A stretch of DNA of 63,868 nt, the filler included, from Octopus bimaculoides (Eukaryota): the NCBI RefSeq assembly GCF_001194135.2. It is 5 parts of 5 records of this genome, joined end to end, with 100 filler letters (N's around TTAATTAATTAA, not from the genome) between each part and the next. Parts side by side here need not be neighbours in the genome. Positions count along the whole stretch, not along the records: positions 1 to 23,899 come from NC_068992.1; 4 more parts are not named here. One strand, 5' to 3'. Position 1 is the stretch's first letter. The number at the start of each line of letters is the position of its first letter. Below the pieces are notes generated by a model. The model ran no database searches, had not been told where the DNA came from, and was given only the letters and a program-made list of their open reading frames with translations. Shown one piece after another: positions 224 through 23,064 of the stretch. Position numbers and translations under genes: made by a program.

Positions 224-340
224 TCAGGCAGTGAAGACATACTTTTGTGTCGGTACACACTGCTTCTTTTTAATACATTTCCACAGCCACTCGGACGTTA
301 TACAGACAGCTGAAGGCGAAGCTGAGCTGACATCACTTTC
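224..340 (-). CDS. LIG3: DNA ligase III, terminal coding exon (BRCT C-terminal half: ESDVSSASPSAVCITSEWLWKCIKKKQCVPTQKYVFTA*)
   Basis: Acceptor ccctcag|GAA, phase 0, TGA at 224-226. ITSEWLWKCIKKK resembles the LIG3 BRCT end (VSPEWIWACIRKR in human, recalled). Confidence 0.88.
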   Translation of the reverse strand, partial: ESDVSSASPSAVCITSEWLWKCIKKKQCVPTQKYVFTA

Positions 341-1249: not shown

Positions 1250-3480
1250 AGATCAGTCTCACATANNNNNNNNNNTCTCATATAGATCATAAACAGAGAG
1301 ATCAGTCTCACATAGATCATAAACAGAGAGATCAATCTCACATAGATCATAAACAGAGAGATCAGTCTTGCATAAATTATAAACAGAGAGATCAGTCTTG
1401 CATAAATTATAAACAGAGAGATCAGTCTCACATAGGTCATAAACAGAGAGATCAGTCTCACATAGACCATAAACAGAGAGATCAATCTCACATAGATCAT
1501 AAACAAAGAGATCAGTCTCGCATAAATTATAAACATAAAATCACATACACATACACACAGTCTATACATACATTAATGCTAATACACAAACACACACATA
1601 CATATATATACACATATTCATACAAACATACACAATAAACAACAAAATGTAACAAATTTTACAAAACTTTAGAAATATAATTTTTAAAAAAAACACCTCC
1701 ATAAACAACACCAAAATGTTGTAAATAAAAAATGTTAAGAACATTTTAGAGAAAGCTGGGAAAAGAAAAGTTTTTAAAATTATCATCATCATTTTAATGT
1801 CCATTTAAATACAAGAGATCAGTCTCACATAGATATCATAAACAGAAAGATCAGTCTTGTANNNNNNNNNNNNNNNNNNNNNNNNNNNNNNNNNNNNNNN
1901 NNNNNNNNNNNNNNNNNNNNNNNNNNNNNNNNNNNNNNNNNNNNNNNNNNNNNNNNNNNNNNNNNNNNNNNNNNNNNNNNNNNNNNNNNNNNNNNNNNNN
2001 NNNNNNNNNNNNNNNNNNNNNNNNNNNNNNNNNNNNNNNNNNNNNNNNNNNNNNNNNNNNNNNNNNNNNNNNNNNNNNNNNNNNNNNNNNNNNNNNNNNN
2101 NNNNNNNNNNNNNNNNNNNNNNNNNNNNNNNNNNNNNNNNNNNNNNNNNNNNNNNNNNNNNNNNNNNNNNNNNNNNNNNNNNNNNNNNNNNNNNNNNNNN
2201 NNNNNNNNNNNNNNNNNNNNNNNNNNNNNNNNNNNNNNNNNNNNNNNNNNNNNNNNNNNNNNNNNNNNNNNNNNNNNNNNNNNNNNNNNNNNNNNNNNNN
2301 NNNNNNNNNNNNNNNNNNNNNNNNNNNNNNNNNNNNNNNNNNNNNNNNNNNNNNNNNNNNNNNNNNNNNNNNNNNNNNNNNNNNNNNNNNNNNNNNNNNN
2401 NNNNNNNNNNNNNNNNNNNNNNNNNNNNNNNNNNNNNNNNNNNNNNNNNNNNNNNNNNNNNNNNNNNNNNNNNNNNNNNNNNNNNNNNNNNNNNNTCTCA
2501 CATAGATCATAAACAGAGAGATCAGTCTCACATAGATCATAAACAAAGAGATCAGTCTCACATAGATCATAAACAGAGAGATCAGTCTCATATAGATCAT
2601 AAACAGAGAGATCAGTCTCACATAGATCATAAACAGAGAGATCAGTCTCACATAGATCATAAATAGAGAGATCAGTCTCACATAGATCATAAACAGAGAG
2701 ATCAGTCTTGCATAAATTATAAACAGAGAGATCAGTCTCACATAGGTCATAAACAGAGAGATCAGTCTCACATAGATTATAAACAGAGAGATCAATCTCA
2801 CATAGACCATAAACAGAGAGATCAATCTCACATAGATCATAAACAAAGAGATCAGTCTCGCATAAATTATAAACAGAGAGATCAGTCTCGCATGGATTAT
2901 AAACAGAGAGATCAATCTCACATAGACCATAAACAGAGAAATCAATCTCACATAGATCATGAACAAAGAGATCAGTCTCGCATAAATCATAAACAGAGAG
3001 ATCAGTCTCACATAGATCATAAACAGAGAGATCAGTTTCACGTAGATCATAAACAGAGAGATCAGTCTCGCATGGATTATAAACAGAGAGATCAGTCTCA
3101 CATAGGTCATAAACAGAGAGATCAGTCTCACATAGATTATAGAAAGATCAGTCTTGCATAAATTATAAACAAAGAGATTGGTCTCACATAGATCATAAAC
3201 AGGGTGATGAGTCTTACATAGATCGTAAAAAGGGAGATTGGTCTCACATAGGTCATAAACAAAGAGATCAGTCTTATATAGATCATAAACAGGGTGATCA
3301 GTCTTACATAGATCATAAACAGGGTGATCAGTCTTACATAGAAATTATTAATGGAGGAGAAGCACTACACCATCAACATTAGTGTTACATAGATCATAAA
3401 CAGAGAGACTTGTCTTACATAAACAGAGAGATCAATCTTACATAGATCAGAAGCAAAGAGATCAGTCTTACATAGAGATC
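1250..3480. repeat. 30-bp minisatellite array (AGAGAGATCAGTCTCACATAGATCATAAAC)n, partly in N gaps
   Basis: Near-identical 30-nt units at 1276-1530 and 2496-3140, decaying towards 3480. Explains the spurious ...RLISLFM... and ...SHIDHKQRDQ... ORFs. Confidence 0.95.
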
Positions 3481-4355
3481 ATAAGCAGGGGATAAGCATT
3501 ACTTTTCCATGCTTGCATGGATCAGGTGAAATTCAGTAAGGAAGATTTTCTGCAGTTGGATGCTCTTCGTGTCACCAACTCTTAGCTATTTCCAAGCAGG
3601 GTTAGTACAAATAGCATTTTAAGTCTTTTTATCATTATAAATATATCAAGAGGGATGAGTAGTGTTCCTGACCCCCTTTCAGGTCCTTAAAACCTGGTCA
3701 GATCAATGCATGTCTCAAAGAAAACAATTCCACTTACCTATTCCAGGAGGAATGGATAAGTGGAGTAAGAAGAATGGTTGGACGTATTATTTTATCTTTT
3801 ACCTGTTTCAGTCATTGGACTGCGGCCATGCTGGGGCACAGCCTTGAAGAGTTTTACTCTCAAACAAATCAACCCTGGCATTATGTTTTGAAGTCTGGCG
3901 CTTATTATATTGGTCTCTTTTGCTGGACTGCTAAGTTGTGACAATGTAAACAAAACAACAGCAATTGTCAAGCAGTGGGGGAACAGACACAAAGACAAAG
4001 ACACACATATACACAAACACACACATACACAAAACAGGCTTCTTTCAGTTTCTATCACTAAATCCACTGACACAGCTTTGGTTGACCCCCCAAGGCTGTA
4101 GTAGAACACACTTGCCCAAGATGCCACAGAATCATGGTTAAGAAGAAGACTTCTTACCACACAGCCATGCCTGCACCTATACATATCTGTAAAAAATATT
4201 TATTTAAATCAAAATATAACTGGATGGTCATGGAACTTCTTTGACGAGGGGTTGGCTGAATTAGAGCTGATCTGAGGGTAGAGGCAAATAAGAAATACGT
4301 TGATCCATACAAATATTAATAACAACAATTGAATGAATATCTTGATTGAACCTAC

Positions 4356-4428
4356 ATTGAGATCTTTGACAATGACAAGGTGGGTGGCGTTGGAGACGTC
4401 ATGTTCCAGCAATACTTCTCCATCGAAA
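4356..4428 (-). CDS. LIG3: DNA ligase III BRCT exon ((A)FDGEVLLEHDVSNATHLVIVKDLN)
   Basis: Matches human AFDGDLVQEFDMTSATHVL (recalled). Preceded by a U12 branch site TTCCTTAAT and an AC 3' splice site; ends AAT|GTAGGT. 73 nt (1+72). Confidence 0.88.
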
Positions 4429-4971
4429 GTGCGATTAATTAAGGAAAACAATTAGAGAAACACAGACAACTAGAATTGAATACAAGTAACAATGGCACAA
4501 AATATTTATTTATTTATAATAATACGCAGAAATATGGTTGTTTGGTTTGCAATGTTCACTTTGAAGCAAAGGGGTTTTAGGTTCAATTCTACAGTGTAAC
4601 ACTGAGCATGTGTCTTCTACTATTGTCTCAAGTTAGCCAATACTTTGTGAGGGAAATTGGGTGGATGGAAACTGTATGGAAGCCCAATGGGTGTGTTTCT
4701 ATCTCAGTGTGCATATGTCTGTCTGTGTGTGTGTACATGCATTTGTGTGTACAATCATTTTCAGTCAACAAATATGGACTGAGGCATTTTCTATGACCAA
4801 GTTTCCTTCCTCATGCCAGCCCTCAAGTGTTTCCAAGCAAGGTAATATTCCTCTATAGCTAGACAGTTTTTCACAAAAAATTCCAAATGAAGGACATTGC
4901 ACTTGTTTACAAGTAACAGATGATATCAGGAAGATACAAACACACACAACCACATGCATGTATACATACAA

Positions 4972-5005
<34 letters not shown>

Positions 5006-5319
5006 TTCCTACTTCATGTAGATATACTGTAAAAACACCTTAATACTGCAGTATTCATTTTGAGAAAGCATTTCATATAGACATTTAGTGTTCTAAAGTA
5101 CAGAAGCATCAGTGGTAGATAAAAAGTGCCTTGCACTGGCAGTGGAGCTGCTAAATCACATGATTTCTGTGAGTTTGTGCATCATCAGCAGCAGGTATCT
5201 ACTAATACCACATGCAAGCCAAACTTCCACTTCTCCTGATATAGAAAAACTGACTAATCAGTCAATGGCACTGCAAATAGCTGGAAGGTTTGACAAAAGT
5301 TAGTTATCAGCAACAGAAG

Positions 5320-5460
5320 TACTATGGCTATACCCTACAGTTATATATACGAGAAGTTTAAAAGTGGCCAGACAGGCGTGACGCACAAAGAGGGAGTTAA
5401 GACGCCCGTCAACCTCCACCACTGACGAGAAGATTCAACAAGCTAGAGAGATAGTAATGG
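5320..5460 (+). mobile_element. Mariner transposase fragment
   Basis: Frameshifted KFKSGQT...RPSTSTTDEKIQQAREIVM, typical of the mariner HTH linker region. Confidence 0.55.
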
Positions 5461-6723
5461 TGAACTAGTTTACCATCACCATCTCTTGGAACATTGCTCT
5501 GTGTTCTTCTTTGATGGACATTACTAGTGGAATGGCCATGCTTACTGTAAATCCAGAAAGAAAAATGGCGCAATCAAGCTCAAACTTCAATCATGTGACC
5601 ACAATAGTACCAACTATAAGCACACATGCACAGAAGGCAGTGTGACAATAATAAAGATATGTTATGGCGAAAGTGCAAATAATTTTTGACTTCCCTTCAT
5701 ATATATATATATATATGAAGGGAATATATATATATATATAGGCGATGGCTTCTTGGAGCTAATTCACGGCAGCTTTCGTCCTAATTTTGGGACTGCCATG
5801 TTGGCTTGGCGATAACTATTAATTTCCAGTACCGCTGCCGTAGTCTCCTTTAGAGAGACTTAGAAATATTAATAACTCTATTTCTGAAAACCAGTGNNNN
5901 NNNNNNNNNNNNNNNNNNNNNNNNNNNNNNNNNNNNNNNNNNNNNNNNNNNNNNNNNNNNNNNNNNNNNNNNNNNNNNNNNNNNNNNNNNNNNNNNNNNN
6001 NNNNNNNNNNNNNNNNNNNNNNNNNNNNNNNNNNNNNNNNNNNNNNNNNNNNNNNNNNNNNNNNNNNNNNNNNNNNNNNNNNNNNNNNNNNNNNNNNNNN
6101 NNNNNNNNNNNNNNNNNNNNNNNNNNNNNNNNNNNNNNNNNNNNNNNNNNNNNNNNNNNNNNNNNNNNNNNNNNNNNNNNNNNNNNNNNNNNNNNNNNNN
6201 NNNNNNNNNNNNNNNNNNNNNNNNNNNNNNNNNNNNNNNNNNNNNNNNNNNNNNNNNNNNNNNNNNNNNNNNNNNNNNNNNNNNNNNNNNNNNNNNNNNN
6301 NNNNNNNNNNNNNNNNNNNNNNNNNNNNNNNNNNNNNNNNNNNNNNNNNNNNNNNNNNNNNNNNNNNNNNNNNNNNNNNNNNNNNNNNNNNNNNNNNNNN
6401 NNNNNNNNNNNNNNNNNNNNNNNNNNNNNNNNNNNNNNNNNNNNNNNNNNNNNNNNNNNNNNNNNNNNNNNNNNNNNNNNNNNNNNNNNNNNNNNNNNNN
6501 NNNNNNNNNNNNNNNNNNNNNNNNNNNNNNNNNNNNNNNNNNNNNNNNNNNNNNNNNNNNNNNNNNNNNNNNNNNNNNNNNNNNNNNNNNNNNNNNNNNN
6601 NNNNNNNNNNNNNNNNNNNNNNNNNNNNNNNNNNNNNNNNNNNNNNNNNNNNNNNNNNNNNNNNNNNNNNNNNNNNNNNNNNNNNNNNNNNNNNNNNNNN
6701 NNNNNNNNNNNNNNNNNNNNNNN

Positions 6724-7733
6724 GTGCCATTCAGTAACAACTTTAGCTGTGTGAATTGGTGCATTATCATCCTGAAAGATTGAGTTTCCGTCTGGAAGCA
6801 GTTCCACAACCATAGGATGAATTTGATCAGATAAAATGCTTAAATAGTTTTGACTATTAATTCTGCCATGGAGGGAAACCATTGGGCCGATCGGATTTCT
6901 AAGATATAGCCCCACCCCAGATCATCACAGATCCTTCTCCATGTTTAACTGTTGGAAGAAGGCAGTCTGGATCAAATGCTTCTTTTGGCTGTCTCCACAC
7001 ATATACTCAGTCGATGGTCGGAAATAANNNNNNNNNNTTGGCTGTCTCCACACATATACTCAGTCGATGGTCGGAAATAAGGTAAAGGATGACTTGTCCA
7101 AGAAAATAACATTCTTCCACAGCTCTAGGGACTAATCCTGTAGGTTTTTACTCCATTCTAAACGCTTTGCAACATTTGTTTTTGAAAGTAGTGGTTTTCT
7201 GATTGCAGCCCTCCCATGAGATCTGGCTTTGTGCAGCTCCTGGTGAACAGCTTTTGTGGAACATGGGTTCTTGAGGTGGTCATTAAGTTCTGCAGTAAAT
7301 TTAGTAGCTGTACTTTTGTGATCCTTTCTAACAATTCATGTAAGAGTCTGGTGGTCCCTATCTGAAAGTTTTGGTTTTCTTTCGGAGTTCTTTTTTGATG
7401 AGGAGGTTTTTCCCTCTTTCTCAAAGGCTGTCATTACTTTCGAGACAGTATTTCTTGATACACCAAACATTTTGGCTGTTTTTGTTACACTAGCACTTGC
7501 CATATGAGCACCAACAAGGTGACCTCTTTGAAAGTCCAATAGATCTGTCATTTTAATAAATTTTAATTACCTTTTTCTGATGATATTTGAAAAGAAACAG
7601 CAATTTTAGCAAAACATATTAAGCAACACTAATAATAAATTAAAAAACCCCCAAAAAAAACAAGATTTTGACGGTTTTATAGATATTTCAAAACTATGAT
7701 GCTAGGTGTTTCCATTATTTTGTCCAACTCCTG
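6724..7733 (-). mobile_element. Tc1-like DNA transposon copy 1 (decayed; 3' end in gap)
   Basis: TA + 29-bp TIR CAGGAGTTGGACAAAATAATGGAAACACC at 7733-7705. HTH region MTDLLDFQRGHLVG...; catalytic region FQDDNAPIHTAKVVTEWH. Frameshifts present. Confidence 0.9.
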
Positions 7734-8935
7734 TATGTGTATATATATATATATAAACAATATACGAGTATATGCATATATATGTACATGTATGTACATA
7801 CCTTCATCTACATGTACATATAGATACATATCTGGGTGCATGACGTTGCAAAAAAAACATAGACAAAATGATAAACAAGGTACNNNNNNNNNNNNNNNNN
7901 NNNNNNNNNNNNNNNNNNNNNNNNNNNNNNNNNNNNNNNNNNNNNNNNNNNNNNNNNNNNNNNNNNNNNNNNNNNNNNNNNNNNNNNNNNNNNNNNNNNN
8001 NNNNNNNNNNNNNNNNNNNNNNNNNNNNNNNNNNNNNNNNNNNNNNNNNNNNNNNNNNNNNNNNNNNNNNNNNNNNNNNNNNNNNNNNNNNNNNNNNNNN
8101 NNNNNNNNNNNNNNNNNNNNNNNNNNNNNNNNNNNNNNNNNNNNNNNNNNNNNNNNNNNNNNNNNNNNNNNNNNNNNNNNNNNNNNNNNNNNNNNNNNNN
8201 NNNNNNNNNNNNNNNNNNNNNNNNNNNNNNNNNNNNNNNNNNNNNNNNNNNNNNNNNNNNNNNNNNNNNNNNNNNNNNNNNNNNNNNNNNGTATATCATA
8301 TTATATATTGTATATTCCATATTCTATACCCCACATTAGTTCTGCAGGAATATAAATAAAACATAAAAAACAGACAGTGTTGGAACTCTTTTAAGCAAAA
8401 TAATATATTCCTCTATACAAAATCATACAAAAAAACCCATCTTTTTTGTATTTATTTTTACTCGCATATATATATATATAAACAATATACGAGTATATGC
8501 ATATATATGTACATGTATGTACATACCTTCATCTACATGTACATATAGATACATATCTGGGTGCATGACGTTGCAAAAAAAACATAGACAAAATGATAAA
8601 CAAGGTACAAAAACCACACAGGCCACATAGAGAGCATATCCTTCAGCAGCTGCCACCATTAAAACACTGGCGTTTAGCAACTTGAGCATATACAGAGCAA
8701 ACCCTTGTGATGGATTTGGTAGACAGAAACTGAGAGTAATACTTCTAATCAATTCTTTTAAAAACAATGAGTGTGTATGCGAGTGTTCATTTTGCATGTG
8801 CCTATGCAAACACATACATGTATACACTCCTAGATATACATGTGTATACACAGAATTATATATTTATGCATACATATATACATACATGTCCACATATACA
8901 CATATGTGTATATACTTATACTCATATATAGATAT

Positions 8936-8983
<48 letters not shown>

Positions 8984-9635
8984 TAAAACATATATCAATA
9001 AAATCTATTAAACATTTTGAAAAGCAATGTATTTTTCTGAACCAGAATGAAATTCAAAGAGGCTTGTATTTGCATAAATGGTGCTTAGTATTAATTGAAG
9101 GTATTATTTTGGAATATTGCTTAAACAGCAACACAATTTCATAACTTCAATTGTACAGAGTTTATGACGTTTACGAAAATATTAACACAAAAACCTGAAG
9201 TGAAATCAAAAGCCATTTTTGCAGGTGTTGTTCACAAAGGTTTTTAGACAAAAGAACATAAGGATAAGTATTTCCTTGAAACTTACATTTCATATTTCAA
9301 AAAATATTCAGACAATGGGATATAGCCCACATTTTTTATCATAGGTCCTGTTGGATCAGAGTTGACCAGGGGCTAAACAACAGCAACAATAACAGAGTCA
9401 AATTTATTAGATAGCTTCTGTGTAGTCACTGAACCTATTAGAAATAGCAGCTAAATCCTCTCTCCAATAGAGAAGAGCACATTAAACAATGTCTTGGCAA
9501 ACATATATTTAAAAAAAACAAGATGGCCCACAGTTGGGACACTTTTGATTACAGGTCCTGCAGGATCAGGGCTGACCAAGGACTAAACAACAACAACAAT
9601 AACAAACATCTAACATTGTAACCATAAAAGGATAT

Positions 9636-9727
9636 GCAATAATGAATCGCTTCAGTTTCTTGTAGGATTCCATATTTTTAGGAAGGTAAATCTTCAGGTT
9701 ATGGAACACATTGGGCAGTGGATCTGA
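9636..9727 (-). CDS. LIG3: DNA ligase III BRCT N-terminal exon (SDPLPNVFHNLKIYLPKNMESYKKLKRFIIA)
   Basis: Acceptor cccttcag|TCA, phase 0. Aligns to human [28 protein letters not shown] (recalled). Ends at a U12 AT donor in phase 2. Confidence 0.9.
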
Positions 9728-9809
9728 CTGAAGGGGTATGAAAAAGAAAGGTCATTAATTAATCATGTAATCATTGTGCTATTAGTATCTATGTAATCAC
9801 TAATTAGTT

Positions 9810-11344: not shown

Positions 11345-11455
11345 CACAGAAGCACTGGCAGAACCACTGGACGATGTAGAATGGTCAAAAGCTTCCAAAT
11401 GTTGAGGATTCTTTTGGTAACAACCACTGCCATATTTACACATTGGTTTCTTCTC
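11345..11455 (-). CDS. LIG3: LIG3 exon encoding a PBZ zinc finger (EKKPMCKYGSGCYQKNPQHLEAFDHSTSSSGSASASV)
   Basis: Acceptor ttctgcttgcag|GAG, donor GTG|GTATAA. 111 nt, phase 0-0, in frame with both neighbours. C-x5-C-x6-H-x5-H spacing with the YG, CY and NPxH residues of the PBZ consensus. Confidence 0.85.
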
Positions 11456-12890: not shown

Positions 12891-13320
12891 ACTTACCCTT
12901 GTTGGTAACAAAGAGCCTCTCCTTCAAAGTGAAAGGCAGATTGTATGATGCCTGTATATGAACAGCTGTGCTACATGGTAGTGAGACATGGTCTGTGACT
13001 GCTGAGGACATGCAAAAGCTTGAAGGAAATGAAGCCAGCATGCTCTGCCAGATGGGTAATGTCTGTGTGCATGTATGGCAGAGTATAAGTGATTTGAGAG
13101 AAAAACTAGGTATTGAAGACATCAGAGGTAGTGTGCAAGAGAGAAGATTGCACTGGTGTAGTCATGTGATGCATATGGATGAAAATAGCTGTATCAAGAA
13201 GTGCTGATCTTGAATTGTGAAGGGAACATGTGGAAGGGTAGACCCAGGTGGACATGGGACCAAGTGGTGAAAAAGGATCTTCAGACATTGTTGCTTACAG
13301 AAGGGATGACAAAGGAGTAA
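12891..13320 (+). mobile_element. RTE-clade LINE, RT C-terminal fragment (decayed)
   Basis: LHGSETWSVTAEDMQKLE...RRLHWCSHVMHM, with stops and frameshifts. Confidence 0.85.
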
Positions 13321-14359: not shown

Positions 14360-15792
14360 TTTTCCTTACCTCTGCTGGCGACAAAGGAACTCTCACTCAG
14401 AGTAAAGGGCAGACTGTATGACGCATGTGTACGAACAGTCATGCTACATGGCAGTGAAACATGGGCTGTGACTGCTGAGGACATGCGTAAGCTCGCAAAG
14501 AATGAAGCCCGTATGCTCCGCTGGATGTGTAATGTCAGTGTGCATACCCAACAAAGTGTAAGTATCTTGAGAGAAAAGCTGAACATAAGAAGCATCAGTT
14601 GTGGTGTGCAAGAGAGGCGATTGCGCTGGTATGGACATGTGGTGAGAATGGACGAGGATAGCTACGTGAAAAAGTGCCACACCCTAACAGTTGAGGGAAC
14701 CCGTGGAAGAGGTAGGCCCAGGAAGACCTGGGCTGAGGTGGTGAGGCAAGACCTTCAAACATTGGGCCTCACCGAGGCAATGACTTCTGACCGAGACCTT
14801 TGGAAATGTACTGTGCGTGAGAAGACCCGGCAAGCCAAGTGAGACCTAAATCCAAGGCCTCTGCCAGAGGTGTAGCCAGCCCACTTATGCATACCTTTNN
14901 NNNNNNNNNNNNNNNNNNNNNNNNNNNNNNNNNNNNNNNNNNNNNNNNNNNNNNNNNNNNNNNNNNNNNNNNNNNNNNNNNNNNNNNNNNNNNNNNNNNN
15001 NNNNNNNNNNNNNNNNNNNNNNNNNNNNNNNNNNNNNNNNNNNNNNNNNNNNNNNNNNNNNNNNNNNNNNNNNNNNNNNNNNNNNNNNNNNNNNNNNNNN
15101 NNNNNNNNNNNNNNNNNNNNNNNNNNNNNNNNNNNNNNNNNNNNNNNNNNNNNNNNNNNNNNNNNNNNNNNNNNNNNNNNNNNNNNNNNNNNNNNNNNNN
15201 NNNNNNNNNNNNNNNNNNNNNNNNNNNNNNNNNNNNNNNNNNNNNNNNNNNNNNNNNNNNNNNNNNNNNNNNNNNNNNNNNNNNNNNNNNNNNNNNNNNN
15301 NNNNNNNNNNNNNNNNNNNNNNNNNNNNNNNNNNNNNNNNNNNNNNNNNNNNNNNNNNNNNNNNNNNNNNNNNNNNNNNNNNNNNNNNNNNNNNNNNNNN
15401 NNNNNNNNNNNNNNNNNNNNNNNNNNNNNNNNNNNNNNNNNNNNNNNNNNNNNNNNNNNNNNNNNNNNNNNNNNNNNNNNNNNNNNNNNNNNNNNNNNNN
15501 NNNNNNNNNNNNNNNNNNNNNNNNNNNNNNNNNNNNNNNNNNNNNNNNNNNNNNNNNNNATTTTGAGCGTGGCCATTGCCAGTACCGCCTGACTGGCCTT
15601 CGTGCGGGTGACATGTAAAAGCACCCACTACACTCTCTGAGTGGTTGGCGTTAGGAAGGGCATCTAGCTGTAGAAACTGCCAAATCAGATTGGAGCCTGG
15701 TGTTGCCATCCGGTTTCACCAGTCCTCAGTCAAATCGTCCAACCCATGCTAGCATGGAAAGCGGATGTTAAACGATGATGATGATGATGATG
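14360..15792 (+). mobile_element. 5'-truncated RTE-clade LINE with 3' UTR and (TGA)n tail, spanning a gap
   Basis: ORF 14441-14842 MLHGSETW...RRLRWYGHVVRM...GRPRKTWAEVVRQDL. After the gap the sequence ends in ...gttaaacgatgatgatg. Confidence 0.85.
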
Positions 15793-16437: not shown

Positions 16438-16740
16438 CTTTGATGTTGAGGATTTTTTGTCCCCTTCCACATTATCAGAACGAGATTTCTGAAACATTTC
16501 ATCAATTTTACGTGCTTTGCTTTTTGAAGATTGCCCTGGTGATTCCTGCTCCTCTTTCATTGGTATTTTCCGCTTGACCGGAGTCTTTTGCAGGGACGAC
16601 TGGCTGTTTTTGTGGTCATCGCTGCTTTGTTCTGCATCTCCTTTGAAGTCATTTTCTTTAGAAGAGTCATCTGCAGGTGATGCCTTCGGAGTAACGAGAT
16701 TTGGAAAGTCGGACACCTCTTTCGATGACTTGTAAAGTTC
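16438..16740 (-). CDS. LIG3: DNA ligase III exon (ELYKSSKE... followed by a low-complexity K/S/D/E linker)
   Basis: Acceptor tttcaaaag|GAA, donor AAG|GTAAAA. 303 nt, phase 0-0. ELYKSSKE continues human ...QLKELYQLSKE (recalled). Confidence 0.88.
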
Positions 16741-19911: not shown

Positions 19912-20276
19912 CTTAAGCCTTGGTAGGTCAGTTGCTTCTTTCCAGCTTTTATCTGTTCGTATTTTGGTGAGACGAGGGAACCTAATGGAAATCCCATCAG
20001 CTGTGTGAATTTCAGCCTTGCTAAATTCTGCTCCGGTGATCTCCCAAACTGGTGCCTGATATGGATCTTCAACAATAAAATCTGGTATGACATTCTTTTT
20101 TATATTTAACCAAGATGGTACTTTCTGAACATCCTTGCTAATTTTTACCATCTTCAGCTCCTTCTGCAAACGGTCTAAGGTTCTGTCATCGAAACCATTA
20201 CCAACTTTGCTAACAGTACACCACTTTTTGGTGAATGGATTGTATACTCCTGTTAAAAACACCGACATAAGTCCAC
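19912..20276 (-). CDS. LIG3: DNA ligase III OB-fold exon (GGLMSVFLTGVYNP...VWEITGAEFSKAEIHTADGISIRFPRLTKIRTDKSWKEATDLPRLK)
   Basis: Contains ligase motif VI SIRFPR and the LIG3-diagnostic VWEITGAEFSK/HTADGISIRFPR. Splice sites ctag|GT and AAG|GTGAGT; 365 nt (2+363). Confidence 0.96.
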
Positions 20277-20876
20277 CTAGCAGAGAAGAGAAGTACAATG
20301 AAACATAAGTTCCAGAATACATGAAAGAAAGGTAAAACAGAACTGTTAAAGATGACTAAATGAATAGAGGCATGACTGAGATTAAACAGTTCACAGTTCT
20401 GGTGATATAATGAAATACACCCAGTTGAGAGAGTAAAATGTTTGGTGACAGGAAACCTGCAATCCTTGGTCTGTCCAACAAGCCTTTCACCACACTAATC
20501 GCTATGCCTAACCCATCATCCCTAGGACATTATCCCACTGTAATCTCCAATGGATTTCTGAACTCAATATTCTACAAGCTATTATTTACAACTTTATCTA
20601 ATTCAAGTTCCACCAATAAAAAAAAATGATTTATTTTTATGTTTTACTGGTTTATTGTGCTTTGCTTCATGAACAGAATAAATTTCAGATGACATGCTGG
20701 GTGGAGAACAATGGACCAATATAATTCACAAAAACTCTTGAATGTGGTGCTCCAGCATGGCCACAGACCAAAAGACTGAAACTTAGTAAACAAACAAATA
20801 AAAGAATCCAGAGGGAAAAAAAACACAGAGGTAAAAAATTTAAACAAAAACTAAATTGAAAAAATTTTTGAAATAC

Positions 20877-21000
20877 CTTTATTTCCAGTGCCATAGTAAG
20901 CTCCAAGAACAACCAAATCAGCAGAGTCTGCCATACTTCCTTGTTCTAAATAATCTTTTTTCACTTTCAACCAATGTCTCTTGCCTGGTTCATAAATACT
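20877..21000 (-). CDS. LIG3: DNA ligase III exon ([42 protein letters not shown])
   Basis: Ligase motif V (WLKVKKDY) and [10 protein letters not shown]. Splice sites attag|AGT and AAAG|GTATTT; 124 nt. Confidence 0.96.
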
Positions 21001-22986
21001 CTAATCACAGTGAGAAAGAGTGATTTGTATTAGATCAGATATCAGGTGTGAAATATGAAGATAGGAGTCACCACCCCACCTACTATGTCTCACCACCCAC
21101 CTGCAACCCCATGATTAATCCTTCTCCTACAAAAGTATCAACCCTTTGGAATTCTTGGACATATTCCAGTGTTTCACCAAACACTACCTGTCCACAGAAC
21201 CAGCCCCACACCAATCCAGATACTGATTCACAGGCATTTCCAATCAGTATTTATCTCACCAGCCTCATCCATAAGGCCTGCAAAGGTCATGGACACTAAA
21301 GCAGGTAGACAAGCATATATAAAATTTACATGAAGCTTATCAAGTGGTTTTTGAGGTTGCAACCTACAAATCAGCAGACCACAATCATTTAGTCATCACA
21401 TTTGAAGAGACAACTGTGATGTTACGGGATGAAATTCAGGACTATAGATAACTAGGAATATATGGATTAGCAATTATACAATATCTAAGACCATTTGTAT
21501 CAAAGGCTATGCATATCAAGGATTATAGGTATTTTGGACCAGCCATATCTTGGATTATACTTATCTGAGACAATATGTAGTTAAGGCAATACATATCTAA
21601 GAATATATGTACCTGGGAATATACATATCTAGGATTATATAAATTTCAAAGACCATATATATCTAGGACTATACATAACTAGGAATATATCCATATATTT
21701 AAACTGGTAATGGTTTTCTGATTAGCATAACTCAAAGTTCTTGATGATTCGGGTAAACACAGTTTTTGAACCGTGTACCACAGGTATGTAATTATACATT
21801 TGTTTGGTGCTTATCTTAATGAAACAGCTGTTGAAAACAATTAAAGTATGGACTATATGTGAAATTTATGCTTTTCTGATTTTATGCACACTAAGAAGAC
21901 ATACAACTAAGACTACATCTATCTAGGACTATATGTAACCAAGATACACATAACTAGGACTATATGAATGTAAAATAATACATGAACTATATGTAGCTAG
22001 AACTATGTCTATCTCAGAGTATATGTAGTATATATGAAAATCTGTAAACTGATGATGAAGGCTTGTATAGAGAATACAATGCTATGAGGTCTAATGGACT
22101 GAAACATGTCTGCAGTTATCCCCTTGCCTGAAACAAAGAGTAGATTGTTCTTTCCCTAAACATGAACCAGATGGCTACACCAGGCTCCAATCTGATTTGC
22201 CAGCTGTAGAAACACTGCCAAATCAGATTGGAGCCTGGTGTAGCCATCTGGTTCACCAGTCTTCAGTCAAATCATCCAACCCAAGCTAGCATGGAAAGTG
22301 GACGGTAAACGATGATGATGATGATGTAAACTAATTCTGAGAGATTAATTCTCAATGTTTTGAAACAGTCTCTCCTTTTCTTTTAAGAGTCTCTAACAAA
22401 CATTGCTGAGTTTTCATAATAGGAAAATTTCATTTCAGAATATTTGTGTGTACAGCATTCATTATTAACCTAGGACTATTACATCAGTTTAAATAAAACA
22501 TCTTGATCAGTTTAAATAAAACGTCTTGATCAGGTTCTACATCCATCTTCATCTTCATTTTCATCTTCATTTTCATCTTGACCTGGTCTTGCCACCAGAT
22601 TAAAGATGGTCACAAGTGAGAGAGCAAGGGAGACAGTGCACAACAATTATTCACTTTAAAGTCACTACACAAATCATCAATCATTCATAAGGATGACTAG
22701 ATGGTCCTCATCGCTCCAACAGATGAACATGTACAACTGCATCATCCAATACATGAAGATGTAAGAGTATGATATGAGGGAGATTTGGCTGCTATTTCTA
22801 GCAAACTCTAGTCATATAGAGGCTTTCTAGCTGGTCGTGTAAGATGGTTCTGATAATGTAAAGCCAACTGTAGCAAATATATTAAATTCCAAATAAACCA
22901 ATCAAGGAATTTCCAAAAAGGCAACTACAAAATATTTCTAGAACAAAGACCATAAAAGAGGAGAAAGGAAAGAAAAACTGTCTTAC

Positions 22987-23064
22987 TTTAATATGTTTCA
23001 AAACAAGTCCTTCTAATCCTTCACGAAAGACCTTTGTCATTAAAGACTGGAGATCAGTTGGTTC
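22987..23064 (-). CDS. LIG3: DNA ligase III exon (EPTDLQSLMTKVFREGLEGLVLKHIK)
   Basis: Ligase motif IV EGLVLK. Splice sites ttgttag|GAA and AAA|GTAAGA; 78 nt, phase 0-0. This is the most 5' LIG3 exon found in the window. Confidence 0.93.

What the first reader, a model, noticed from the sequence alone, without database searches (positions are those of the whole stretch)
4429..9635. U12-type AT-AC minor intron splitting the BRCT domain of DNA ligase III
Seen: the exon 9636-9727 ends ...ATT ATT GC|ATATCCTTTT, a perfect U12 5' consensus. The next exon has no usable AG acceptor, because the nearest upstream AG gives an in-frame TAA. Instead it is preceded by TTTTCCTTAAT-TAATCGC-AC|, a U12 branch consensus about 10 nt from an AC. 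Joining the two gives LKRFIIA|FDGE, restoring the BRCT motif (human RYFVAFDG). Established: AT-AC introns are rare, are spliced by the minor spliceosome, are often rate-limiting, and are missed by GT-AG gene finders. The LIG3 BRCT binds XRCC1. Inference: minor splicing may gate production of the XRCC1-binding isoform. Retention would end the protein about 22 codons later at TGA, loosely analogous to the BRCT-less mammalian LIG3beta. I do not know whether this intron position is conserved or already catalogued.
Basis: partly seen in the sequence, partly recalled or inferred. Interest (0 to 1): 0.85.

Follow-up and report, generated by a model that had tools for sequence, protein, structure and literature searches.

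The report
Ancient AT-AC minor intron in DNA ligase 3
The DNA ligase 3 gene here really does contain a rare "minor-spliceosome" (U12-type, AT-AC) intron inside the part that encodes its BRCT domain; it is spliced out cleanly in every RNA sample examined and is very old, so it is a solid but ordinary example of a known kind of intron, not a demonstrated regulatory switch.

Summary
Confirmed. On the minus strand, exon 9636-9727 ends ...ATTATTGC, followed by ATATCCTTT, a 9/9 match to the U12 5' consensus. Exon 4356-4428 is preceded by TTTTCCTTAAT-TAATCGC-AC, with the branch A at -11. RNA from 9 runs carries exactly ATTATTGC|TTTCGATGG: 67-72 split raw reads in 3 libraries, plus assembled transcripts in 6 more runs. 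No read crosses either exon/intron boundary. The spliced product matches Pfam LIG3_BRCT end to end. The three assembly gaps all lie inside the intron. Only its length (nominally 5,207 nt, 1,244 of them N) is uncertain.

The position is ancient. A coral has a U12-type GT-AG intron at the same codon and phase, and a shrimp has a U12-type 5' site there. A sponge, a thrips and an unidentified eukaryote have U2-type introns there. Frog, fish, bryozoan, mite and rotifer have none. In four related species the branch site and AC terminus are unchanged while flanking exon and intron bases differ.

The idea that minor splicing gates a BRCT-less isoform finds no support. This is a new member of a known kind, useful for annotation and as an example of U12 intron evolution.

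The parts
9636..9727 (-). Exon A (92 nt). It encodes the first half of the BRCT domain (SDPLPN...KRFII + GC) and ends in phase 2.
   Evidence: RNA depth is confined to 9636-9728.
9627..9635 (-). U12-type 5' splice site ATATCCTTT (intron positions +1 to +9).
   Evidence: It is the only RTATCCTTT in the window. Raw reads and contigs break exactly at 9636.
4429..9635 (-). The AT-AC intron. Nominal length is 5,207 nt, of which 1,244 are N in three assembly gaps (5897-6723, 7028-7037, 7884-8290).
   Evidence: Excision is shown.
4438..4448 (-). U12 branch-point sequence TTTTCCTTAAT (core TCCTTAAT at 4438-4445). The presumed branch A is at 4439, 11 nt from the 3' end of the intron.
   Evidence: Unchanged in genomic contigs of four related species.
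4429..4430 (-). 3' terminal dinucleotide AC.
   Evidence: Junction reads. Unchanged in four related species.
4356..4428 (-). Exon B (73 nt): (A)FDGEVLLEHDVSNATHLVIVKDLN. It is followed by the U2-type donor GTAGGT.
224..340 (-). Last coding exon (ESDVSSASPSAVCITSEWLWKCIKKKQCVPTQKYVFTA, stop TGA at 224-226). This is the C-terminal third of the BRCT domain.
   Evidence: The loose end of the transcript contig at 4355 reads into it.
11345..11455 (-). Upstream exon encoding a PBZ (zf-CCHH) zinc finger. It is spliced GT-AG to exon A.
   Evidence: The loose end at 9728 matches this exon's 3' end.
16438..16740 (-). Linker exon (ELYKSSKEV...SSTSK).
19912..20276 (-). Exon encoding the OB-fold / DNA_ligase_A_C region.
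20875..21003 (-). Exon encoding ...[17 protein letters not shown]...GTGNKG. Boundaries are approximate.
   Evidence: tblastn.
22987..23064 (-). Exon encoding EPTDLQSLMTKVFREGLEGLVLKHIK (adenylation domain end).

Best explanation
This is a genuine U12-type (minor-spliceosome) intron of the AT-AC subtype. It lies in phase 2 inside the Ala codon of the conserved BRCT motif (R/K)(Y/F)(I/F)(I/V)A|(F/Y)DG of a DNA ligase 3 orthologue.

Shown: it is removed precisely and, in all RNA examined, essentially completely. Removal yields a full-length LIG3 C-terminus of OB fold, linker, PBZ finger and BRCT.

Inferred: it is a constitutive intron inherited from at least the cnidarian-bilaterian ancestor. This organism kept the AT-AC form. 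A coral and a shrimp have the GT-AG U12 form. A sponge and an insect have a U2-type intron at the site. The sampled vertebrates, a bryozoan, a mite and a rotifer have lost it. Recognition is by U11 at ATATCCTTT and U12 at TCCTTAAT. That mechanism follows from the sequence signals and established knowledge. It was not tested directly.
For: Sequence signals:
- The 5' site matches the consensus 9/9.
- The branch-point core matches TCCTTRAY 8/8, with the A at -11.
- The intron ends in AC.
- There is no pyrimidine tract and no usable AG.

RNA:
- 33+16+18 raw reads carry exon A sequence at 4429, with agreement 0.99-1.
- 37+16+19 reads are split at 9636.
- Depth is 0 at 9575-9628 and 4433-4459 in all three libraries.
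- Contigs in X1, X5, X6, X10, X13 and X25 carry the same junction.

Protein: the spliced product matches LIG3_BRCT over 1-78 of 78 (E 2e-21), plus PBZ and DNA_ligase_A_C, and matches human LIG3 BRCT structures.

Genomic DNA: at least 11 DNA runs of the organism hold the 3' boundary words, and X15 holds the 5' boundary words.

Orthologues at the same codon and phase:
- Coral: ATTATTGC|GTATCCTTTGACA...TTTCTTAAC-N16-AG|TTACGACGGA.
- Shrimp: ATCATTGC|GTATCCTTTTATG.
- Sponge: GTAAGC...CAG.
- Thrips: GTACTG...CAG.
- Unidentified eukaryote: GTAAGT...TAG.
- Absent in frog, fish, bryozoan, mite and rotifer.

Selection: four related species show no change in 4416-4458. The most distant has 14 differences in 225 nt, including four nonsynonymous changes in exon B and intron changes from 4459 on.

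Literature: the series AT-AC, then GT-AG U12, then U2, then loss is the accepted route (PMC2831892, PMC7367187).
Against: - Dependence on the minor spliceosome is inferred from signals only.
- Minor snRNA genes of this organism were not examined.
- Only three raw-read libraries of unknown tissue were available, each sampled at about 6%. Assembled contigs drop rare isoforms.
- One run (X25) has a low-depth intronic contig (depth 12 against 340) ending 15 nt from exon A. It could be pre-mRNA or a low level of retention.
- The shrimp 3' splice site and downstream exon were not found, so its type rests on the 5' site alone.
- The ancestral U12 state is a parsimony argument from three lineages.
- The organism itself was not identified.
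Confidence: 0.9

Rival explanations
1. Regulated minor-intron retention. Slow or tissue-limited U12 splicing leaves the intron in a fraction of transcripts. Those would give a protein ending IIAYPFMVTMLDVCYCCCCLVLGQP* that lacks most of the BRCT and cannot bind XRCC1, as a functional analogue of mammalian LIG3-beta.
For: - The retained frame is open for 22 codons and then stops.
- U12 introns are reported to be spliced slowly in some genes (PMC4066798, PMC4615840; abstracts seen).
- One low-depth intronic contig lies near the 5' site in X25.
- The splice signals are conserved in related species, although constitutive splicing explains that equally well.
Against: - No read crosses either boundary against 67-72 junction reads in three libraries.
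- All six transcript assemblies are spliced.
- No RNA run in the index holds the unspliced 5' boundary words except runs that look like DNA or mixed samples.
- The neighbouring U2 intron shows more intronic reads.
- A premature stop upstream of two further exon junctions would normally trigger nonsense-mediated decay. This point is established knowledge, not tested here.
- Many lineages have converted or lost the intron with no sign of a replacement switch.
Confidence: 0.06
2. It is a U2-dependent AT-AC intron: rare termini, but removed by the major spliceosome.
For: Such introns exist, for example in sodium-channel genes (PMC2831892, PMC1557818).
Against: - Those introns have a U2-like 5' site with G at +5. 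Here +3 to +9 is ATCCTTT.
- There is a perfect TCCTTAAT 11 nt from the 3' end and no pyrimidine tract.
- The coral and shrimp orthologues have the GT form of the U12 5' consensus.
Confidence: 0.03
3. Artefact: either a mis-assembled scaffold or a reverse-transcriptase template switch imitates a splice junction.
For: The intron holds three assembly gaps and repeat fragments. The junction has 1 nt of shared sequence.
Against: - The same junction appears in 9 runs from 7 studies spanning 2015 to 2026.
- One nucleotide of overlap is too little for template switching.
- The join restores a conserved domain end to end.
- Both boundaries are present in independent DNA runs.
- Orthologous introns sit at the same codon in other phyla.
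Confidence: 0.01

Closest known systems
U12-type (minor-class) spliceosomal introns, AT-AC subtype
   Same: - 5' ATATCCTTT
- Branch site TCCTTAAY 10-15 nt from the 3' end
- AC terminus
- No pyrimidine tract
- Non-zero phase
- A single such intron among U2-type neighbours, at least within this window
- Precise excision in vivo
   Different: Nothing structural differs. The host gene is the point of difference. The sampled vertebrate LIG3 genes have no intron at this site, and no paper in the searchable library links LIG3 with minor introns.
Orthologous LIG3 intron of the coral Desmophyllum pertusum (L001, about 7819-8124)
   Same: Same codon and same phase 2, with ATTATTGC before the intron. It has a U12-type 5' site and a TTCTTAAC branch motif.
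   Different: It is the GT-AG subtype, 306 nt long, with the branch A about 18 nt from the 3' end. It was typed from sequence only, and no RNA was checked.
Class-conversion series of U12 introns (AT-AC, then GT-AG U12, then GT-AG U2, then loss), as described by Burge and others, Lin et al. 2010 (PMC2831892) and Moyer et al. 2020 (PMC7367187)
   Same: At this one site all four states are seen across animals: AT-AC here; GT U12 in coral and shrimp; U2 in sponge, thrips and an unidentified eukaryote; absent in frog, fish, bryozoan, mite and rotifer.
   Different: The direction of change is inferred, not reconstructed on a dense tree. Sampling is about a dozen taxa.
Mammalian LIG3-alpha / LIG3-beta alternative C-termini
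   Same: Both concern whether the C-terminal BRCT, the XRCC1-binding module, is present.
   Different: The mammalian isoforms arise by choice of an alternative last exon using U2-type splicing. In the frog and fish examined, the whole BRCT is one terminal exon. No BRCT-less transcript was seen here.

Membership tests
U12-type intron | 5' splice site matches [A/G]TATCCTTT. | tested here: met
   ATATCCTTT at 9627-9635 on the minus strand, 9/9. It is the only such 9-mer in the window.
U12-type intron | Branch-point sequence TCCTTRAY close to the 3' splice site (about 10-20 nt), with no pyrimidine tract. | tested here: met
   TCCTTAAT at 4438-4445, with the branch A at -11. It is followed by TTAATCGCAC.
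U12-type intron | AT-AC (or GT-AG) termini actually used in vivo. | tested here: met
   Junction ATTATTGC|TTTCGATGG in 67-72 raw reads and 6 transcript contigs. A 1-nt ambiguity allows CA-CA formally.
U12-type intron | Formal classifier score (intronIC, SpliceRack PWMs). | not tested
   The matrices are not available here. Only a consensus comparison was made.
U12-type intron | Splicing depends on U11, U12, U4atac and U6atac. | not testable with these tools
   This needs knock-down or inhibition experiments. The minor snRNA genes lie outside the window, and Rfam found no RNA family in it.
U12-type intron | Orthologous U12-type introns exist in other lineages. | tested here: met
   A coral U12 GT-AG intron at the same codon and phase. 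A shrimp U12-type 5' site at the same codon. The signals are unchanged in four related species.
DNA ligase 3 (LIG3) orthologue | ATP-dependent ligase core plus a C-terminal LIG3-type BRCT. | tested here: met
   Pfam DNA_ligase_A_C (E 2e-13) and LIG3_BRCT (E 2e-21). Best hits are named DNA ligase 3. Matches human LIG3 BRCT structures.
DNA ligase 3 (LIG3) orthologue | N-terminal PARP-like zinc finger. | not tested
   The 5' part of the gene lies outside the piece. Orthologous loci do have zf-PARP upstream.
LIG3-beta-like BRCT-less isoform | Transcripts exist that replace or truncate the BRCT-coding part. | tested here: not met
   There are no retention reads and no alternative junction at exon A or exon B in three raw libraries. 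All assemblies are spliced.

The most novel reading that the evidence does not exclude
The AT-AC intron has been kept for more than half a billion years because it couples output of XRCC1-binding LIG3 to minor-spliceosome activity. In some unsampled tissue or state, such as germ line or stress, retention would yield a BRCT-less, LIG3-beta-like ligase or shut the gene down through nonsense-mediated decay.
Probability: 0.05. Interest if true: 0.55.

Novelty: new member of a known kind. Interest (0 to 1): 0.3.

Why it matters
1. Annotation. GT-AG-only gene finders break LIG3 at this site. The deposited shrimp protein ends ...RYIIAYPFMIISV*, which is read-through of the U12 donor. A EukProt model carries a spurious AYPFTQAFSSK insertion. 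Both models misrepresent the XRCC1-binding BRCT. The peptide AYPF/AYPL after (Y/F)(I/V)(I/V) is a quick flag for the error.

2. Evolution. One site shows every stage of the accepted U12 intron life cycle across animal phyla: AT-AC, GT-AG U12, U2-type, and loss. Because the sampled vertebrates lack the intron, human-anchored minor-intron orthology sets would probably not list it.

3. Function. It does not at present point to new LIG3 biology. The intron behaves as constitutive.

Tried and rejected
Joints were read from loose ends on the two exons separately, and DNA continuity across the gaps stays untested.
- A BRCT+PBZ-only homology search found one protein. A profile search with a 25-sequence BRCT alignment found nothing. 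No named mollusc, annelid, echinoderm or amphioxus locus could therefore be fetched.
- The closest relative in the protein database (L006, 77% identity in the OB exon) did not reach the BRCT exons within the 10-kb flank.
- The shrimp downstream exon and 3' site were not found within 10 kb, which includes 907 N.
- Runs of other organisms that share words with the 5' boundary stretch proved to match a high-copy repeat at 9558-9605, not the orthologous splice site.
- Supplementary tables of two minor-intron surveys were not held or had no LIG3 entry.
- GT-AG alternatives that keep the frame open do exist: cryptic donors at +32 to +59 with an AG 11-14 nt inside exon B. No read uses them.
- The organism could not be identified because run and organism names are coded.
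Full report
**What is in the sequence**

The gene runs on the minus strand. Exon A (9636-9727, 92 nt) translates as SDPLPNVFHNLKIYLPKNMESYKKLKRFII plus GC. It is followed by ATATCCTTTTATGG. Exon B starts TTTCGATGGAGAAG at 4428 and is preceded by TGTTTTCCTTAATTAATCGCAC. The core TCCTTAAT puts the presumed branch adenosine 11 nt from the intron end.

The only AG in the last 120 nt of the intron lies 41 nt upstream. Using it runs into an in-frame TAA. The 9-mer RTATCCTTT occurs once in the window, at the exon A boundary.

Joining 9636 to 4428 gives KRFIIA|FDGEVLLEHDVSNATH. Exon B ends at 4356 (AAT|GTAGGT). The last exon (340-224) adds ESDVSS...QKYVFTA and the stop.

The spliced C-terminus matches Pfam LIG3_BRCT over the whole model (1-78 of 78, E 2e-21). 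It also matches a PBZ zinc finger and DNA_ligase_A_C. The BRCT part aligns to the human LIG3 BRCT structures 6wh1, 3pc7 and 1imo, with RRYFVAFDGD opposite KRFIIAFDGE.

**Assembly gaps**

The three N runs (827, 10 and 407 letters) all lie inside the intron, so no reading frame passes through them. One 3,377-nt transcript contig (run X13) aligns 9636-9728 at its positions 2839-2931 and 4355-4429 at 2931-3005, on one strand. This has three consequences:
- The outer pieces of the scaffold are correctly ordered and oriented.
- No exon is hidden in the gaps.
- Only the intron length (5,207 nt nominal, 3,963 read) is uncertain.

The two inner pieces (6724-7027 and 7038-7883) hold transposon-like ORF fragments, and their placement could not be verified.

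Both splice-site boundaries are present in independent genomic runs of the same organism. X15 holds all sampled words across the 5' boundary. At least 11 DNA runs hold those across the 3' boundary.

**RNA evidence**

| Evidence | Result |
|---|---|
| Raw reads aligned to exon B that continue at 4429 into CAATAATGAATCGCTTCAG... (reverse complement of the end of exon A) | 33, 16 and 18 reads in three libraries (each about 6% sampled), agreement 0.99-1 |
| Raw reads split at 9636 | 37, 16 and 19 reads |
| Depth next to the boundaries (9575-9628 and 4433-4459) | 0 in all three libraries |
| Transcript contigs from X1, X5, X6, X10, X13, X25 (studies dated 2015-2023) | All carry ATTATTGC|TTTCGATGG |

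The junction has a one-base ambiguity (AT...AC or CA...CA). Only AT-AC coincides with the splice signals. The U2-type intron downstream of exon B shows 1-6 intronic reads in two libraries, so the minor intron is not the less efficiently removed of the two. The one hint of unspliced RNA is a low-depth contig in X25 (depth 12 against 340) that ends 15 nt short of exon A.

**Comparative evidence**

LIG3 loci of other organisms were fetched, and the exon boundaries were read at the homologous codon.

| Organism | State at the site | Sequence |
|---|---|---|
| Coral *Desmophyllum pertusum* | U12-type, GT-AG, same codon and phase 2, 306 nt | ATTATTGC\|GTATCCTTTGACA ... CACTTTCTTAACTTATCGTGTACTGTAG\|TTACGACGGA |
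| Shrimp *Penaeus vannamei* | U12-type 5' site | ATCATTGC\|GTATCCTTTTATG |
| Sponge *Geodia barretti* | U2-type | GTGTC\|GTAAGC...TTCAG\|G |
| Thrips *Frankliniella fusca* | U2-type | CTAGG\|GTACTG...ACAG\|C |
| Unidentified intron-poor eukaryote | U2-type | ATTGC\|GTAAGT...TTAG\|T |
| Frog, fish, bryozoan, mite, rotifer | No intron; region lies inside a larger terminal exon | - |

The deposited shrimp protein ends RYIIAYPFMIISV*, which is read-through of the donor. Its downstream exon was not found within 10 kb.

Two further observations come from the protein hits:
- Thirteen ORF-style gene calls from unidentified contigs stop immediately after ...IIA, ...IVA or ...VIS. That is what GC|GTAA or GC|GTGA would give.
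- One EukProt model reads RYIIAYPFTQ..., the signature of [AG]TATCCTTT.

Genomic contigs of four related species cover 4300-4560. None differs anywhere in 4416-4458, which contains the branch site and the AC. The most distant of them has 14 differences in 225 nt, including four amino-acid changes in exon B and intron changes from 4459 outward.

**Interpretation**

Shown:
- The intron exists.
- It has full U12 AT-AC signals.
- It is excised at exactly those sites.
- It is efficiently removed in the RNA sampled.
- Its position is shared across Porifera, Cnidaria, Arthropoda and this organism.
- Its 3' signals are conserved among close relatives.

Inferred:
- It is spliced by the minor spliceosome. 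This follows from the signals and from what is established about U11 and U12 recognition.
- The U12 state is ancestral at least to cnidarians plus bilaterians. The later steps were a subtype switch, conversion to U2-type and outright loss.

This order of events follows the class-conversion model. In that model conversion runs almost only from U12 to U2, and AT-AC introns pass through a GT-AG U12 stage (PMC2831892, PMC7367187).

Unsampled tissues leave it a small residual probability.

**Relation to what is known**

No paper in the searchable library links LIG3 with minor or U12-type introns. Large surveys have classified introns in thousands of genomes, including molluscs and corals (PMC10639083, PMC11347168). 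The intron may therefore sit unremarked in bulk tables wherever the gene model is right. The ancestral-state analysis in PMC11347168 is anchored on human introns, and the sampled vertebrates lack this one, so such human-anchored analyses would probably not pick it up.

I could not identify the organism because run and organism names are coded.

**Verdict**

The structural interpretation is supported and the regulatory inference is not. This is a new member of a known kind. Its value is practical (gene annotation) and illustrative (intron evolution). Interest is 0.3.

Noticed in passing
window 11345-11455 (-): This LIG3 carries a PBZ (zf-CCHH, poly-ADP-ribose-binding) zinc finger, KPMCKYGSGCYQKNPQHLEAFDH, on its own exon between the ligase core and the BRCT (Pfam E 6e-11). 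In the hit table, the coral, sponge-like, nematode and several unidentified LIG3 proteins also have PF10283. The frog and the named fish hits do not. It looks like an invertebrate LIG3 domain that vertebrates lack. I found no paper describing it.
   Followed up: partly
L010 6208-6321 / P0036 (Penaeus vannamei, GCA_003789085.1): The deposited shrimp 'putative DNA ligase 3' ends ...MKRYIIAYPFMIISV*. The gene model reads through a U12-type donor (GC|GTATCCTTTT) and lacks the rest of the BRCT. EukProt model P0023 has a comparable spurious insertion, AYPFTQAFSSK.
   Followed up: partly
window 1276-3342: A 30-bp minisatellite (unit TCTCACATAGATCATAAACAGAGAGATCAG, at least 37 copies, 87-90% matches). 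It is interrupted by two assembly gaps and lies in the last intron of the gene. In the ORF list it appears as long LISLFMIYVR... pseudo-ORFs.
   Followed up: partly
window 9558-9605: A roughly 45-nt element 30 nt downstream of the U12 donor is an extremely high-copy repeat. Thousands of contigs match it, and summed word depth reaches about 880,000 in one run. It is also present in three other organisms (coded C, D, E). It is probably part of a SINE-like element and was not classified.
   Followed up: no
window 6730-7551 (-): ORF fragments inside the minor intron resemble a Tc1/mariner-type transposase. There are weak HTH_23 and Sleeping Beauty HTH hits for 7336-7551, and a ...DDNAPIHTAKVVTEWH fragment runs into the gap at 6724. 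These pieces sit between assembly gaps, so their placement is unverified.
   Followed up: partly
window 12968-13207 (+) and 14441-14842 (+): Two related ORFs (MLHGSETW.VTAEDM.KL..NEA.ML..M.NV...RRL.W..HV..MDE.S..KKC) lie in the intron between the PBZ and linker exons. From memory they resemble the C-terminal part of non-LTR retrotransposon ORF2 proteins. Pfam gave no hit.
   Followed up: partly
P0057, P0067, P0090, P0091, P0102 (hit table): Several LIG3-like proteins from unidentified organisms combine the ligase core and LIG3_BRCT with a macro domain (PF01661), another ADP-ribose-binding module. In those whose BRCT region could be read, the ORF is continuous across the intron site.
   Followed up: no
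window 4280-4351, 4470-4520 and 9440-9570: Low-level RNA signal lies inside introns. There are 1-6 reads just downstream of exon B in two libraries, a 489-nt low-depth contig ending 40 nt upstream of the U12 3' site, and up to 4 reads at 9440-9570 in one library. This could be pre-mRNA or repeat-derived transcripts. None touches the U12 splice sites.
   Followed up: no
window 4397: All four related species have T where the window has C on the plus strand. By my reading of the exon B frame this is Val in this organism and Ile in the others, at FDGEVLLEHD-V. It is a lineage-specific substitution in the BRCT.
   Followed up: no
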